A stretch of 64,000 bases of DNA from positions 1,225,932 to 1,289,931 of the forward strand of contig RHPI01002090.1 of the NCBI GenBank assembly GCA_009103225.1. The letters run 5' to 3'. The notes beneath the pieces were generated by a model. That model did not search any database. It worked only from the letters and a program-made list of their open reading frames with translations, and was not told where the DNA came from. Source of the DNA: Chlorokybus atmophyticus (Eukaryota > Plantae > Mesostigma and Chlorokybus algae). The position numbers and the translations under genes are program-made. Below are positions 4,755 to 41,994 of the stretch, one piece after another. Within the stretch, counting starts at the first letter, position 1; each line of letters begins with the position of its first letter.

Positions 4755-5602
4755 GTATGTTGTTGAAGCTATGCTAGAAAACACACATACATGGGGGTGT
4801 GGCATTAGTCACATGTGTGTTGAAGTTTCATTCAAAGCCATGCAATTTAGAAGAAGTCAAACGCTTGAACCTCAACGATGAATTGTAGACTTCGGCACAC
4901 TGTTGAACATTGTTAATTTGCTATGAGTAATTGTTTGATTCCTGTCCATTGCAATAATTGGAACCGGGATACCAAGCATGCAATTGGATTGCAAAGCGTC
5001 CATTTTAAGCCACGAGAGCAAGCATGCAATACACTTCGTAATTGATGGTAGTTATGCGATGTTGAAGTACCTTGCCTGTGGTGTTGCCTTGTGCAATCAT
5101 TGCACCATGTATGAACATCCCCTTATGCAACATCATGTGGGAGCTGTTGATGACGGGGTTGGTCATGAAAACATTGGCAATGAGTCGTAAAGGAAGGCTG
5201 GCCCGTTGTGATAACATACGTGCAAGATGTCTACCACAATGCCCTCGGAATGTGGGTGGGCGGCATCCGCGACACCTGCATGTGCCATCAATTATACAGG
5301 TTGGTCGATGTTGAAGTCGTGGTCGGTCGTGCTGACAGACCAACATGGCTAATGAACAACAGGCGACGCTGATACGATGCGTCTTTCAAGGCGGCCAACT
5401 AACCTCTGCTTGACTGCGCACTTCTATAGTACAACCATAAGCATGCACAGACGGGATGTGCTACTCGATCTTACTAGAATGGGATGCTTACATGTGCAGG
5501 GCTTGCTGTCAATGTACATGCTCTGCTGCACCAGAAACCTGCCAGTGTACACCAAAGTAACACCTTATTGTTCCGTTTCGCCTACTGCTTGTGCCGACAA
5601 GT

Positions 5603-8600
5603 CTAATGGTCATGGGCCTGGTGCTTGTTGGAGTTGACAACATAAGACCTGTAAGTTGTGCTGATCTCAGTGGCAGTCTTGCGAATGTTCTCAAAGGCGC
5701 CCTCTTGTCTAGCAACTTTCTGTACACTCCGGGATATTTTCCTCGCAAGCTTGGCGGCCAGTGCAGACCTTTGGCGCACCGACAACTTTGAAACCTGCCA
5801 ATGCCAACATTGTCAATTGTTGCTGTATTCCAGAAACATGTGACGCATCCATCTGTTTTGCGTACCTCATCTGTATCAAACGCTTCTAAGATGCCGCCCC
5901 CGCGCCGAGGGACCGCAAGCTCCCGCCAGTCCATCGGGTAAAAGCCAAACTCATTAGCTAGAGCCTGCACGGCGGTCGCATCAGGTTTCAATCGCAAATC
6001 ACACAACTGCTGGACCGCAACATTCAGCGTGCAAGCTGACAGAATGTGTTCTCCAAACAGCACCTGATGCAGTTGCGACCGCTGTGTGCCAATGACACCC
6101 TTGACTATCCCCCGATAATCCGCGCTAGCACCCTGTGAAACAATTGTGTTTCCTTGACGATCTACAAGCATCTGATCATGGACCGACATGCACACAACAT
6201 CAGCAACCTGCATGCCGTAGTACACACCTGACCGTGGATTTCTACAGTCGGGACACCGCGAGCCGCCTGGTCACTCAGAGCTTGTTATCAAGATGTCAAG
6301 CGCATGGCATCTCAAGACTTAAATACTGTGCAATAGCGTTTGCAGGTCGTGACGTATCAATCAGATGAAATACCTGAGCTGATATCCAATCAAGGTAATC
6401 GTCCCATTGCATAGTGGGAGCATCCCGATCGGGCCGCAGGACCCGCCAGCCGCTGGTGGAAAGCTGGGTCGTGACACGATTTGCCACCTGTGACAGCATC
6501 ACCAATGTCATAACGATATATCAAATGCCGTCAACAGCAACTACTCGGCTACAATGGTTGGAAAGGATCCCATGCATTGCTGATCTGCAATAACAAAAAG
6601 TGTATTGAGGGTCATCAGGAGCCGCTGACCTCCATGTTGAAGTTTCGCTCGCCTGGAGCACCAGTGTCATCCTCTGGGTCAATCCAGTGGCCGGGCACAA
6701 TGGCGACCATGTTGCGGGTGGCTTTGGTTCCGGCGGTTGCCATAATGTCCACATCATGGTACTCTTTGGCTTGTAACCTGAGAGCCTTGGCCGTGCGAAA
6801 CGTGCTGCCAGATCTGATCAAGTCCAACTTAAGGTCATGAGGGACTACCTCTCCTTCTAGTGTTGGCCTGCGCCCTGAGTAAGCAGTATACCCAAAATTT
6901 GATACATTATACTTGTAAGTGTTGTGATGCAGCGAACACTTCATGCATGTGAGAAGGCTTTCAGTCCCAATGACAATAAAGCCAGCACGAAGATGAATAA
7001 TGACCTGCAACAACTGGCAGCTCAATGTGGCCTCCGAACACTGCTGTCGTTCTGCGATCCACAGGGATGGGCTTTTCAAACTGCGACACCAGCTTCGGGT
7101 TGCCGGAGTTTCTGTACACGCGAAAGAACTCAACGGGCTGCCAGTCCACCTCCACCGAGAACAACGGTTTGTGGGCGTTGTCTCTGCTGATCTGCCACGA
7201 GCCGCGGAGCGTGATGCCCACCGGGCCAACGCGAACAACGCGCTTGATGGACACAACGGGGACAGGTAACAACTCCAGAACGGGCCGCACACCTGGTATG
7301 ATATAATGTTGGGTACCATGCACATGTTGATGATGTATGTAACCTGTACAGATAAAACAGGCATACCTATGTCCCCCATGCCCACCATGCGTTCAAACTT
7401 GATGCGTACTGAAGGATGAAAGCTTACTCCGCCCACACTAACAGTGCCAGCACCAGAACCGACAGCCACGTTCCCAAACGGTTTTGTCACAAACAGCGCG
7501 TTAGAATCTGTGTCATGGTGGTTTGTACTATGGCTGTTCCCGTTTAGAAGCAAATCGGAATCATGCTTGTCGCCCCCTCGCCAGTCCCGGAACGACGGGA
7601 ATCGCATGGATGCCATGCCGCCCACCTGCAAAGACACAGGGAGAAACGGCCATCGCCATGTACCGTTGGAATCTGCGGCCATGGCGTCATGAGTGCAGGC
7701 TGATGGCAGAGGACAGGTATGCATGCGTGCATGAAGTTTTGTACTTACTCAGGCCCAGTGCTTGAGGCAGCGACCACGATCTTCGCACGGTTAGCTGCGG
7801 TTGTGCGGGAGCCGTGACACCTTCTCGGCATCTGGCTGTCACCTTCCAGCGATACGCCTATACGCACAGAGGTGTCATACAAGCATGTTTCCAGGAGCAC
7901 TGTTCTGCTTAAACAGAACTGCAACGTTATTGCCACGAGTCAAGGCAAGCCCTTCCATGCATGCCACAACTGCGATACACGAGAGTCGAGATAAACATGG
8001 CTTGATAACGCAGGCATCGTAATGACGTTGACCACGAGCAACGTGTGGCAAGGGCTGTCATACACGAACACAGAGCACAGAGCACTTGCATGTGAAGAGA
8101 GCATGCATGGGCATCATGAAAAGAAGGACATCATGTCCGTCATACAGAGTGCGCAACGTACAGTGGCTGATGCAGGTGCTCATTGCAAGGTGGTGCAACT
8201 CATACAAGCATAGTTCACTGTAGACATCTGCTTAAGCAGCACACAAGCAGCCGAGCTCGCACGTCCCATGCACTTGACACCGTTCTGCATTGCAATGGGA
8301 AAGCTCTCAAGGCGGGAAGCAACAAAGCATAAAGAAGTTGTCACAAAAGAAGCAACCCCAACCAGCAAACAACGCAAGCAATCACGGCGATTGGTCTCGC
8401 TGTTGTAGTCTCTCACCCTGGGAGGCCCGTAGCCAATCTTCCTGTCGTTCTCGGCCTCAGGCTCGAGTCCTCTGCAGCGCACGCCAACGCAGAAGCCCTC
8501 GTCGTCGTAGCCGTCCCAGTGGGGGTCCCAGTTGCTGCGCTCCCGCTGCGCCATGCCCCTGTGCCCATGCCCGTGGGAGTGGCTGTGCCCGTGACTGTGC

Positions 8601-8611
8601 CCATGCTGCAT
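5603..8611 (-). CDS. His-rich N-terminus + beta-strand-rich domain + N-acetylmuramoyl-L-alanine amidase (Amidase_3-like) domain
   Basis: Phase-consistent GT-AG exons 8611-8417, 7625-7367, 7292-7005, 6874-6630, 6487-6374, 6266-6228, 6132 (or 6171)-6064, 6009-5866, 5785-5603. Motifs MVAIVPGH...DTGAPGERNFNMEVANRVTTQLSTSGWRVLR, VEIH and PRRGGGILE match the Amidase_3 H/E/H/E pattern. Confidence 0.75.
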
Positions 8612-8898
8612 TGGTGTTTGATCTAGCTAACTGATGAGCTGTGGTGCGCACAAGTCAGCTGTCACATCACCACCAAGCTCCACTTCAGCTGACGCCTCCG
8701 TTCACCAATGCCGCCCATGCATACACTACAGCATCAAAAGTGCCCCAGCTTTAGGGTTTTGTGTCGCTTCTGCGCGCGTGCTTATATTTGAATTTGAATG
8801 TTTTACCGGACGGTCCAGCTGGCGGAAGCGGAGGTTCAGGCAGGTTGGCAAGGGCTCCACATCGACGCCAACAGGAACAAGCAAAGACGAGGCTGGTC

Positions 8899-10262
8899 AT
8901 GGAGTCGCCTTTGCGGGTGATAGAACAGCAGCTGCAATGTTCTGTTTGGTGAGTGCTACCATTGCTCGCGTGCGCGGCCTGCTCTGCCTGCTTACTGGCC
9001 CTTAATCCGCGGACAGCTGATGTTGTTATGTTGCTGTTGTTTGCGTCGATTGCTTATGTTGCGGCTTACTTGACTTTCCGGAGTGGCTGATTGCTTGCCT
9101 CCTGCCTTAGCGCGCAACTGCTGGATGACCCGCAGTCGCTGCCCTGCGCGCACAACTTCTGCAGGTTCGTACTACACCGACCAGTCGTATACGTTCAGAG
9201 CTTTTCAGCATGCGATCCTCTTCAACATGTCGTACAGGTGTGCAGTTGCATTCACAGCTGCATTGACCAAGTCCCTTGCGCCAGGCATTGCATATTCACT
9301 GCGCTTCAATCAAGGTCCCAGTGTCCTCAGTGCATGCTGCCAGTCTGGCCGAAAGACGTTTGCAAAAACCCCACTTTGGCGAACATTGTCCAAGCATACA
9401 GCTCACTGCGCGCAACTTCTGCTCGCAACTGTAAGCACAACAGCGCGCACAGGTTCACACGCTTATTTGTGTAGGGAATTACTGCAAGTTACTGCAAGTG
9501 TGCTGTAGCGTGCATGCTCACTAGCTTATTGGTGTGTCTGTTTGCAGCAAGACACAAACAGAGTGGTTCAAGATCCCCTGAAAAGACACATGTACAGAAT
9601 CAACGCAGTGTCAATGCGCATGCTGCGGAACCCTTGTCAGTGTCAAGCCAGGAAAGGATGAGGCCAAGCCTGCAGTTGCAACCTGCAGCTGGTAGGATAG
9701 CAGTGTCCTCTCCCCAGCAGCCGTTGCACCAAAGCAGTCCAAAGGCCGAAGCGAGCAATGAATGGCACCGTGACACCCTTGTTGAAGAGTCTGCTCCAGG
9801 CCCTTCCAACCAGGTGCATGTCAGACAGCGGTGTGCAGCATTGCATAACGGCATGTGCTGATGTGTCAAGTGCAGGGATGGCCGCCAAGTGAGAGTGTTG
9901 CTGAGCAGAGAGCTGCACAAGAGGTTGACAGGCTACTAGCGGTTGAGGTAATGTGCCAATGACATTTGCAATGCTTGCCAACCTCAGCAGCGGCACTGGC
10001 CTTGATGGAGTGTTGCATTGCAGCATTTGACAGTACCGTCAAGCATTGTTTGTACTCTGCAGAGCTCGGAGGTGCGAAGGTTGATCAAGTTGATGTCTGA
10101 AGCAGATGCCATATTGATTCGACACGGCATAGGTAACCAACACAGCTCTCAATTTTGCATGCGATACGCCTATGTCTGTGTCTGATTCATGCACTGTTTG
10201 CAGATCCGTCATTGTCTAGCTTGCAGCGCCTTCTGCAAGGCGCTGCTCCCCTTCATTGCTGA
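8899..10262 (+). CDS. N-terminal C3HC4 RING-finger protein (BRCA1/BARD1-like RING); 3' end uncertain
   Basis: Spliced MESPLRVIEQQLQCSVC-AQLLDDPQSLPCAHNFCR-HCIFTALQSRSQCPQCMLPVWPKDVCKNPTLANIVQAY; further exons at ~9548-9813, ~9875-9946, 10062-10131 and 10204 onward reach TGA 10260-10262. No BRCT seen. Confidence 0.75.

Positions 10263-41335: not shown

Positions 41336-41994
<659 letters not shown>

What the first reader, a model, noticed from the sequence alone, without database searches (positions are those of the whole stretch)
5603..6720. Intron-containing peptidoglycan amidase (Amidase_3) with a complete catalytic set in an algal nuclear gene
Seen: the domain only appears after manual splicing of six or so short exons. 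It reads MVAIVPGH(6687-6689)WIDPEDDTGAPGE(6648-6650)RNFNMEVANRVTTQLSTSGWRVLR...VEIH(6234-6236)GQ...LANEFGFYPMDWRELAVPRRGGGILE(5884-5886)AFDTDE...LAAKLARKISRSV. Established: Amidase_3 enzymes (AmiA/B/C, CwlC) use His, Glu, His for Zn plus a catalytic Glu, with this IDPGH / G..E..NL..A..L...G..V..R / SIH / LVE order. Plastid peptidoglycan is known in glaucophytes and Physcomitrium, and Mur/PBP genes occur in several green algae. Inference: this is a host-encoded septal-type hydrolase for a plastid peptidoglycan layer, or an antibacterial enzyme. The LA.EFG.YP...PRRG..ILE stretch recalls cyanobacterial amidase-like proteins from memory only.
Basis: partly seen in the sequence, partly recalled or inferred. 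Interest (0 to 1): 0.9.

Follow-up and report, generated by a model that had tools for sequence, protein, structure and literature searches.

The report
Barrel-anchored peptidoglycan amidase, green algal gene
This is a real, expressed, nine-intron nuclear gene of the alga Chlorokybus that joins a predicted 12-stranded membrane beta-barrel to a very divergent bacterial-type cell-wall amidase domain with all four catalytic residues intact, which makes it a testable candidate for the enzyme that trims the peptidoglycan layer around plastids.

Summary
Transcript contigs from two studies show nine GT-AG introns. The spliced CDS (8611..5603, minus strand, 551 aa) equals the JGI Chlorokybus model Chlat1/4018.

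The C-terminal 168 residues model confidently (pLDDT 91). They match only Amidase_3 MurNAc-L-Ala amidases at the top: VIA Z 11.9-14.4 for 23 entries, next fold 8.7. A global profile alignment places the four residues on the canonical Zn-ligand and catalytic columns. They are invariant in 36 eukaryotic and 5 prokaryote-type homologues. Pfam PF01520 scores only 15-17 bits against a cut-off of 27, so this is an unannotated sister family, not a formal member.

Distant prokaryotic and phage relatives fuse the domain to M23, LysM, SLT, glucosaminidase or phage-lysozyme domains. Named eukaryotic members are green algae, bryophytes, lycophytes, ferns and Ginkgo, with no angiosperm. This resembles the distribution of plastid peptidoglycan.

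The N-terminal half models as a 12-stranded outer-membrane-type beta-barrel, including a match to chloroplast OEP21.

"Septal-type" and "cyanobacterial" are not supported. Enzyme activity, location and topology are inferred, not shown.

The parts
5512..8713 (-). Transcribed region: 10 exons and 9 GT-AG introns, as covered by one 1860-nt RNA contig
5603..8611 (-). CDS span including introns. It encodes 551 aa and is identical to P0001 (jgi/Chlat1/4018). ATG at 8611-8609, TAG at 5605-5603.
8417..8713 (-). Exon 1: 102-nt 5'UTR plus residues 1-65, including the His-Gly/Ser repeat at residues 2-17
7749..7857 (-). Exon 2 (residues 66-101): first barrel strands
7367..7672 (-). Exon 3 (residues 102-203): barrel strand 3, a low-confidence loop and strand 4
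7005..7292 (-). Exon 4 (residues 204-299): barrel strands 5-11
6630..6874 (-). Exon 5 (residues 300-381): last barrel strand, linker and start of the amidase domain, with H362 (6687-6689) and E375 (6648-6650)
6374..6487 (-). Exon 6 (residues 382-419): helix 1, strand 2 and helix 2 of the amidase domain
6228..6266 (-). Exon 7 (residues 420-432): strand carrying the EIHGQ motif, with H430 (6234-6236)
6064..6132 (-). Exon 8 (residues 433-455): GVIG strand and the following helix
5866..5964 (-). Exon 9 (residues 456-488): VPRRGG..ILE strand with the catalytic E482 (5884-5886)
5512..5794 (-). Exon 10 (residues 489-551, stop, 91-nt 3'UTR): last helix of the domain and the C-terminal tail
6795..7854 (-). 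Coding span, with introns, of the predicted 12-stranded transmembrane beta-barrel (residues about 67-326)
   Evidence: Model pLDDT 73. VIA Z 10-12 to 12-stranded outer-membrane barrels, including OEP21. Alternating hydrophobic/polar pattern in 11 of 12 strands. Coordinates.
5714..6710 (-). Coding span, with introns, of the Amidase_3-like catalytic domain (residues about 355-515)
   Evidence: Model pLDDT 91, fold matches, coordinates.

Best explanation
The gene encodes a two-domain protein. Residues about 67-326 form a 12-stranded transmembrane beta-barrel. Residues about 355-515 form a compact zinc amidase of the Amidase_3 (MurNAc-L-alanine amidase) fold. In that domain H362, E375 and H430 would hold the zinc and E482 would act as the general base.

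Shown: the gene is nuclear, spliced and expressed. The fold assignments are confident for the amidase domain and moderate for the barrel. The four residues are invariant and align to the canonical columns.

Inferred: the barrel sits in the plastid outer envelope, since organelle outer membranes are the only eukaryotic membranes known to hold such barrels. It would hold the amidase in the intermembrane space, much as OmpA holds its peptidoglycan-binding domain. There the amidase would cut stem peptides off the glycan strands of the plastid peptidoglycan layer, allowing the wall to be remodelled or split as the plastid grows and divides. Because the autoinhibitory insert of AmiA/B/C is absent, control would come from placement or expression rather than from an EnvC/NlpD-type activator.
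For: Splicing and expression: two studies, nine joints; exact match to P0001.

Fold: the AF2 model has pLDDT 91.2 and pTM 0.88. The top 32 Foldseek PDB matches are all Amidase_3 amidases; the best is Nostoc AmiC2 5emi, E 3e-6, TM 0.63. VIA-align gives Z 11.9-14.4 over 141-156 of 168 residues for 23 Amidase_3 entries, then drops to 8.7. In a language-model feature search, 97 of 100 named hits are Amidase_3.

Residues: hhalign against phage Amidase_3 domains gives E 1.6e-4. The global alignment puts H/E/H/E on the GH, EK, S-x-H and L-x-E columns. The residues are invariant in 36/36 family members and in 12/12 sequences that include prokaryote-type ones.

Substrate: distant relatives carry the domain together with Glucosaminidase, LysM, Peptidase_M23, SLT or Phage_lysozyme2. 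One sits on a phage contig with a terminase, and another lies next to an M23 gene.

Distribution: named members are Mesostigma, Closterium, Spirogloea, Mesotaenium, Marchantia, Riccia, Calypogeia, Selaginella, Diphasiastrum, Adiantum, Ceratopteris, Ginkgo, Pycnococcus, Chloropicon, Tetraselmis and Picocystis, with no angiosperm. Chloropicon, Micromonas, streptophyte algae, bryophytes and lycophytes are reported to keep the peptidoglycan toolkit (PMC10784329, PMC13519894).

Barrel: (all 50 top VIA rows are membrane barrels; OEP21 7bgh scores Z 10.3).

No hidden presequence: there is an in-frame stop upstream of the ATG.
Against: Pfam PF01520 is below its cut-off in every member. Profile-profile probability is only 22-50%. 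The tools do not return model coordinates, so I could not measure whether the four side chains converge on one metal site. The barrel model is only moderate (pLDDT 73; Foldseek TM at most 0.46), and I could not verify that it closes. Location (plastid or mitochondrion), the side of the membrane that the amidase faces, and enzyme activity are all untested. The match between this family's distribution and peptidoglycan retention is by inspection of named hits, not a formal profile. I did not confirm Mur genes in this genome myself.
Confidence: 0.6

Rival explanations
1. The domain has the Amidase_3 fold but acts on a different amide substrate, or the protein works in another membrane such as the mitochondrial outer membrane. 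In that case it has nothing to do with plastid peptidoglycan.
For: The Pfam score is below threshold and the family has its own motifs (GHWIDPG, EIHGQG, GVIG), which shows strong divergence. The wider fold also includes poly-gamma-glutamate hydrolase, N-formylglutamate amidohydrolase and desuccinylases. Beta-barrels also occur in mitochondrial outer membranes.
Against: Those other families score far lower (Z at most 8.7, against 12-14). Prokaryotic and phage relatives of this exact subfamily are fused to classic peptidoglycan-degrading or peptidoglycan-binding domains. The distribution resembles that of plastid peptidoglycan (PMC10784329).
Confidence: 0.17
2. It is a non-catalytic tether. The barrel plus a peptidoglycan-binding, enzymatically silent amidase-like domain would link the outer envelope to the wall, in the manner of OmpA or Pal.
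For: The architecture mirrors OmpA, with an N-terminal barrel and a C-terminal wall-binding domain. Inactive amidase-fold binding modules are known in bacteria (my own knowledge).
Against: All four catalytic positions are invariant across Chlorophyta, Streptophyta and prokaryote-type homologues. That is not expected of a pure binding module.
Confidence: 0.1
3. It is an antibacterial or defence lysin aimed at bacteria around or inside the alga.
For: Relatives occur in phage lysins. Other eukaryotes have acquired amidases for defence (my own knowledge).
Against: There is no signal peptide and an in-frame stop lies upstream of the ATG. The N-terminal half is a predicted membrane barrel. In its resolved parts the gene tree follows the species tree: Chlorokybus with Mesostigma, and liverworts, ferns and land plants each together. 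That points to an old housekeeping gene. The family is absent from named angiosperm proteins.
Confidence: 0.06
4. It is an artefact: bacterial contamination or a chance frame assembled by over-eager manual splicing.
For: None beyond the general prior for hand-spliced models.
Against: Nine spliceosomal introns are confirmed by RNA contigs from two studies. The JGI model is identical. Orthologues at 40-70% identity occur across green plants.
Confidence: 0.01

Closest known systems
Compact Amidase_3 (PF01520) MurNAc-L-Ala amidases: Nostoc AmiC2 catalytic domain (5EMI), CwlV (1JWQ), M. tuberculosis Rv3717 (4M6H), PlyPSA (1XOV)
   Same: Same alpha/beta fold (Z 13-14.4, rmsd about 3 A over about 150 residues). 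Same order and secondary-structure placement of His, Glu, His and the catalytic Glu. Same compact size with no regulatory insert.
   Different: Sequence identity is only 13-24%. The Pfam HMM is not passed. The first motif reads V-P-G-H-W-I-D-P-G rather than D-x-G-H-G-G-x-D-x-G. The protein is eukaryotic, intron-bearing and fused to a membrane barrel.
E. coli septal amidases AmiA/AmiB/AmiC
   Same: Same catalytic fold (Z 12.3-12.9). The local profile alignment matches the first His and Glu to AmiC H196 and E211.
   Different: There is no autoinhibitory insert: His-to-Glu spacing is 52 residues against 108. There is no AMIN domain and no export signal. An EnvC/NlpD-type activation step is therefore not expected.
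OmpA-type architecture (N-terminal outer-membrane barrel plus C-terminal periplasmic peptidoglycan-associated domain)
   Same: A barrel followed by a wall-directed soluble domain. OmpA's barrel is among the Foldseek matches.
   Different: Twelve strands rather than eight. The soluble domain is a predicted enzyme, not an OmpA_C binding domain. There is no sequence relationship.
Chloroplast outer envelope channel OEP21 (7BGH) and other 12-stranded barrels (KdgM, NanC, FapF, autotransporter beta-domains)
   Same: The N-terminal domain model aligns at Z 10.3-11.9 over 148-185 residues.
   Different: Sequence identity is 5-10%. No Pfam family matches. The barrel carries a C-terminal enzyme domain. 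Membrane insertion is untested.
DipM (LysM + LytM/M23), the known nucleus-encoded plastid peptidoglycan hydrolase of Cyanophora and Physcomitrium (PMC4015805)
   Same: Proposed role: a host-encoded hydrolase of plastid peptidoglycan, restricted to lineages that keep the wall.
   Different: The fold and the bond cleaved are unrelated. That study found Ami-type amidase homologues only in cyanobacteria, not in photosynthetic eukaryotes.

Membership tests
Amidase_3 (Pfam PF01520, MurNAc-LAA) | Scores above the Pfam gathering threshold (27 bits) | tested here: not met
   P0001 scores 14.9 bits as the full protein and 16.7 bits as the domain. 22 of 36 family members match weakly, with a best E of 8e-4. 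None reaches 27 bits.
Amidase_3 (Pfam PF01520, MurNAc-LAA) | Three-layer alpha/beta fold of the MurNAc-L-Ala amidases | tested here: met
   AF2 model pLDDT 91. The top 32 Foldseek matches are all Amidase_3. VIA Z is 11.9-14.4 for 23 entries, and the next fold scores 8.7.
Amidase_3 (Pfam PF01520, MurNAc-LAA) | Zn ligands His (end of strand 1), Glu (start of helix 1) and His (end of strand 3), in that order | tested here: met
   The global hhalign alignment to six phage Amidase_3 domains places H362, E375 and H430 on the GH, EK and S-x-H columns. DSSP positions fit. The residues are invariant.
Amidase_3 (Pfam PF01520, MurNAc-LAA) | Catalytic Glu on the last core strand | tested here: met
   E482 aligns to the L-x-E Glu of the endolysins. 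It lies in model strand 135-141. It is invariant.
Amidase_3 (Pfam PF01520, MurNAc-LAA) | The four side chains converge on one metal site in 3D | not testable with these tools
   The tools do not return model coordinates.
Amidase_3 (Pfam PF01520, MurNAc-LAA) | Cleaves the MurNAc-L-Ala amide bond | not testable with these tools
   This needs a biochemical assay. The only indirect support is fusion of distant relatives to other peptidoglycan-acting domains.
Septal amidases AmiA/B/C | Autoinhibitory helix inserted between the third ligand His and the catalytic Glu | tested here: not met
   The spacing is 52 residues here, 108 in E. coli AmiC and 61 in phage endolysins.
Septal amidases AmiA/B/C | AMIN targeting domain or a Tat/Sec signal at the N-terminus | tested here: not met
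   Pfam finds no AMIN domain. The N-terminal domain models as a 12-stranded barrel. The N-terminus is a His-rich tail.
Transmembrane beta-barrel of organelle or bacterial outer membranes | An even number of long antiparallel strands with alternating hydrophobic and polar residues, forming a barrel | tested here: inconclusive
   The model has 12 strands. 11 of 12 show the alternating pattern. All 50 top VIA rows are membrane barrels at Z 8-12. However, pLDDT is 73, Foldseek TM is at most 0.46, and I could not check barrel closure without coordinates.
Transmembrane beta-barrel of organelle or bacterial outer membranes | Resides in the plastid outer envelope | not testable with these tools
   This needs localisation and protease-protection experiments.

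The most novel reading that the evidence does not exclude
This unannotated family would be the 'missing' amidase of green-lineage plastids. A 12-stranded outer-envelope beta-barrel would present a constitutively open Amidase_3-type enzyme to the intermembrane space, where it strips or splits plastid peptidoglycan during plastid growth and division. On this reading the family was inherited vertically from the common ancestor of Chlorophyta and Streptophyta and was lost when the wall was lost in most seed plants. No barrel-enzyme fusion of this kind has been described for any organelle.
Probability: 0.45. Interest if true: 0.85.

Novelty: new variant of a known kind. Interest (0 to 1): 0.7.

Why it matters
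Plastids of streptophyte algae, bryophytes, lycophytes, ferns and some green picoalgae keep a peptidoglycan layer that is needed for division. The known host-encoded hydrolases for it are DipM and, from my memory of a paper I could not open, a few moss enzymes. A dedicated search reported Ami-type amidases only in cyanobacteria (PMC4015805).

This family escapes Pfam and NCBIfam and is labelled 'hypothetical' everywhere. Yet it is conserved with an intact catalytic set in the lineages thought to keep the wall.

If it is the plastid amidase, three things follow:
- It gives a directly testable gene for how the wall is opened from the outside. Mp4g21500 in Marchantia, and a 471-aa relative in AlphaFold DB that may be from Physcomitrium, are tractable targets.
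- It gives a new marker for the presence of plastid peptidoglycan.
- It gives a first example of an organelle outer-membrane barrel carrying an enzyme domain.

Tried and rejected
- Pfam on single exons gave nothing; the pieces are too short.
- phmmer and a family profile against PDB sequences gave only chance hits.
- hhalign against E. coli AmiA/B/C aligned only the first 48 columns, because the E. coli enzymes carry a long insert. I therefore fetched six compact phage Amidase_3 domains and repeated the comparison.
- tblastn of the domain against 50,697 phage records gave no match.
- Scans of 185,579 bacterial and archaeal species genomes with eukaryote-type and prokaryote-type motifs found no confirmed relative. 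A scan of IMG/VR found none.
- NCBIfam has no model for the family.
- The Utsunomiya et al. 2021 paper on moss peptidoglycan hydrolases is not held. My recollection is that it lists MltB, NagZ, LdcA and a DD-carboxypeptidase but no amidase. That is memory only.
- Paper searches for a plant or algal plastid Amidase_3, or for Mp4g21500, found nothing relevant.
- The domain tree resolves only shallow clades. Its backbone is open, so it cannot show that the green sequences form one clade separate from the short prokaryote-type ones.
- I rejected contamination (introns, RNA, orthologues) and intron retention ending at the TGA at 6615-6617 (no contig shows it).
Full report
**What is there.** Reading the minus strand of 5000-7400 shows short open stretches bounded by AG and GT. 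Joining seven of them by hand gave one open frame.

RNA-library contigs from two separate studies (X1 from 2021, X2 from 2013) were laid on 5300-8900. They show nine joints, all CT..AC on the + strand, which is GT..AG on the gene's strand. One 1860-nt contig runs from 5512 to 8713.

Rebuilding the mRNA from these joints gives a 551-codon CDS from 8611 to 5603, with an in-frame stop in the 102-nt leader. The product is identical to P0001, the JGI model Chlat1/4018 of Chlorokybus. The TGA at 6615-6617 is inside intron 6629-6488.

**Is it an Amidase_3?** By sequence, only marginally:
- Pfam gives PF01520 as the only hit, at 14.9-16.7 bits against a cut-off of 27.
- 22 of 36 family members show the same weak hit, with a best E of 8e-4.
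- Neither the protein nor a 36-sequence profile finds any solved structure by sequence.
- NCBIfam has nothing.

By structure the answer is clear:
- The 168-residue domain, modelled with the family alignment, has pLDDT 91.2 and pTM 0.88.
- Its top 32 Foldseek matches in the PDB are all MurNAc-L-Ala amidases of the Amidase_3 family. Nostoc AmiC2 is first (E 3e-6, TM 0.63).
- VIA-align gives Z 11.9-14.4 over 141-156 residues for 23 such entries. There is then a gap to 8.7 (poly-gamma-glutamate hydrolase) and about 7 for other zinc hydrolases of the wider fold.
- A language-model feature search agrees: 97 of 100 named hits are Amidase_3.

**The catalytic set.** I fetched E. coli AmiA/B/C and six compact phage endolysin Amidase_3 domains. 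Profile-profile comparison with the E. coli enzymes aligns only the first 48 columns. It pairs H362 with AmiC H196 and E375 with AmiC E211.

Against the phage domains the local score is E 1.6e-4 (probability 50%). The global alignment is colinear over 154 columns. It puts H362 on the G-H of D-x-G-H-G-G, E375 on the E-K glutamate, H430 on S-x-H, and E482 on the L-x-E glutamate.

In the model these residues sit just after strand 1, at the start of helix 1, in strand 3 and in the last core strand. All four are invariant in the 36 eukaryotic sequences and in a 12-sequence set that includes five prokaryote-type homologues. I could not measure the metal-site geometry because the tools return no coordinates.

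**What kind of amidase.** The spacing from the third-ligand His to the catalytic Glu is 52 residues. It is 61 in the phage endolysins and 108 in E. coli AmiC. The autoinhibitory insert that makes AmiA/B/C depend on EnvC/NlpD is therefore absent. There is also no AMIN domain. 'Septal-type' is not supported. The domain is of the compact, constitutively open kind.

**The family.** A word-indexed search with the domain found 50 proteins. An exhaustive profile search of 1.84 billion cluster representatives found only 130 at E of 1e-3 or better, many of them fragments.

Every hit that carries an organism name is from Viridiplantae outside the angiosperms:
- Streptophyte algae: Mesostigma, Closterium, Spirogloea, Mesotaenium.
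- Liverworts: Marchantia, Riccia, Calypogeia.
- Lycophytes: Selaginella, Diphasiastrum.
- Ferns: Adiantum, Ceratopteris.
- Gymnosperm: Ginkgo.
- Chlorophytes: Pycnococcus, Chloropicon, Tetraselmis, Picocystis.

A 471-aa AlphaFold DB entry matches at 52% identity. Its accession style suggests Physcomitrium, but the tool masks the organism. The marine metagenome members sit among eukaryote-type neighbours such as U-box and nucleotide-sugar transporter genes.

In its resolved parts the domain tree follows the species tree: Chlorokybus with Mesostigma (SH-aLRT 96), liverworts together, ferns together, and land plants with zygnematophytes nearby. The backbone is unresolved.

This range resembles the reported range of the plastid peptidoglycan toolkit: streptophyte algae, bryophytes, lycophytes, ferns, some gymnosperms, and Chloropicon and Micromonas (PMC10784329; PMC13519894). 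I did not test that correlation formally.

**Substrate evidence from distant relatives.** The weaker full-domain hits are prokaryotic or viral, and they place the domain beside classic wall-acting modules:
- Glucosaminidase (P0092)
- two LysM domains (P0101)
- SLT plus M23 (P0110)
- M23 (P0131, P0147)
- Phage_lysozyme2 plus M23 (P0150)

P0150 lies on a contig with a terminase. P0092 lies next to an M23 gene in a mobile-element-like neighbourhood. P0101 is in a bacterial metagenome-assembled genome. This is guilt by association, but it points consistently to peptidoglycan.

I found no member in INPHARED phages, in GTDB species genomes or in IMG/VR. The source of the green-lineage gene is therefore open, and nothing supports a cyanobacterial origin.

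**The other half of the protein.** Residues 58-344 were modelled with 34 homologues. The model gives 12 long antiparallel strands (pLDDT 73, pTM 0.66), plus one disordered loop at about residues 142-172.

- Foldseek returns almost only bacterial outer-membrane barrels, with low TM scores of at most 0.46.
- The ESM Atlas search returns porin-like families at TM about 0.5.
- VIA-align gives Z 10-12 over 150-185 residues to 12-stranded barrels: FapF, KdgM, NanC, autotransporter beta-domains and a designed 12-strand barrel. It also matches the chloroplast outer-envelope channel OEP21 (7bgh, Z 10.3). All 50 top rows are membrane barrels.
- Eleven of the twelve strands alternate hydrophobic and polar residues.

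The N-terminus is a His-Gly/Ser repeat without signal-peptide or transit-peptide character. The in-frame stop upstream excludes a longer N-terminus in this transcript. This agrees with another first-stage note on the same window (s1-186499) and extends it.

**Mechanism proposed.** In eukaryotes, transmembrane beta-barrels are known only from the outer membranes of plastids and mitochondria, and they are imported without cleavable presequences (established knowledge). Peptidoglycan lies in the plastid intermembrane space (PMC4015805).

I therefore infer an OmpA-like arrangement. The barrel would sit in the plastid outer envelope. A linker of about 30 residues would follow. The amidase would sit in the intermembrane space and remove stem peptides from the glycan strands, so the wall can be thinned or split as the outer envelope constricts.

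The steps that are shown are the gene structure, expression, the two folds, and conservation of the catalytic residues. The steps that are inferred are substrate, compartment, topology and timing.

**Rivals.**
- A non-peptidoglycan substrate or a mitochondrial location (0.17).
- A non-catalytic wall tether (0.10). Invariance of the catalytic residues argues against it.
- A defence lysin (0.06). The lack of a signal peptide, the barrel and the vertical inheritance argue against it.
- An artefact (0.01). This is refuted.

**Known or new.** The DipM study searched for Ami-type amidases and found them only in cyanobacteria, not in photosynthetic eukaryotes. Reviews of plastid peptidoglycan do not mention an amidase. 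Searches for a plant or algal plastid amidase, or for the Marchantia gene identifier, found nothing. The one paper on moss peptidoglycan hydrolases that I could not open lists, as far as I remember, no amidase.

All database members are 'hypothetical' or mislabelled 'CheA'. I rate this a new variant of a known kind: a known catalytic fold in a previously unrecognised, lineage-restricted sister family with a new barrel-enzyme architecture.

Other first-stage notes on this genome mention further intron-bearing peptidoglycan enzymes, including GH73, NamZ, NlpC/P60 and VanY. I did not check them, and they count only as leads.

Noticed in passing
window 8555-8611 (-): The protein starts with a His-Gly/His-Ser repeat (residues 2-17). 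It is absent from the Marchantia and Chloropicon orthologues. It could be a metal-binding tail or low-complexity drift.
   Followed up: partly
window 41338-41993: A pure (GA)n microsatellite of about 328 copies (656 bp, 99% matches). It explains the extreme GC and AT skew of the 40-42 kb bin.
   Followed up: partly
AlphaFold DB entry A8I9G7: The best AlphaFold DB cluster match of the N-terminal barrel model (E 9e-7) is residues 137-371 of an unnamed 371-aa protein. This may be a barrel-only relative without the amidase domain. The tool masks the organism.
   Followed up: no
P0052, P0054, P0055, P0036, P0037: Marine metagenome members of the family are 720-1180 aa long, with the amidase-like domain at the extreme C-terminus. 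Their long N-terminal parts were not examined. They could be fused gene calls or a different anchoring domain in picoalgae.
   Followed up: no
L004:6266-8454: On a 17.8-kb metagenomic contig, a Glucosaminidase + amidase-like protein follows an M23 peptidase gene. FtsK/SpoIIIE-like, RusA-like and SNase genes lie nearby, which looks like a mobile element or phage lysis/entry module.
   Followed up: partly
window 5866-6874 (-): All five introns inside the amidase-coding part (after exons 5-9) are phase 0 and 71-142 nt long. Exon 7 is only 39 nt and carries the third-ligand His.
   Followed up: partly
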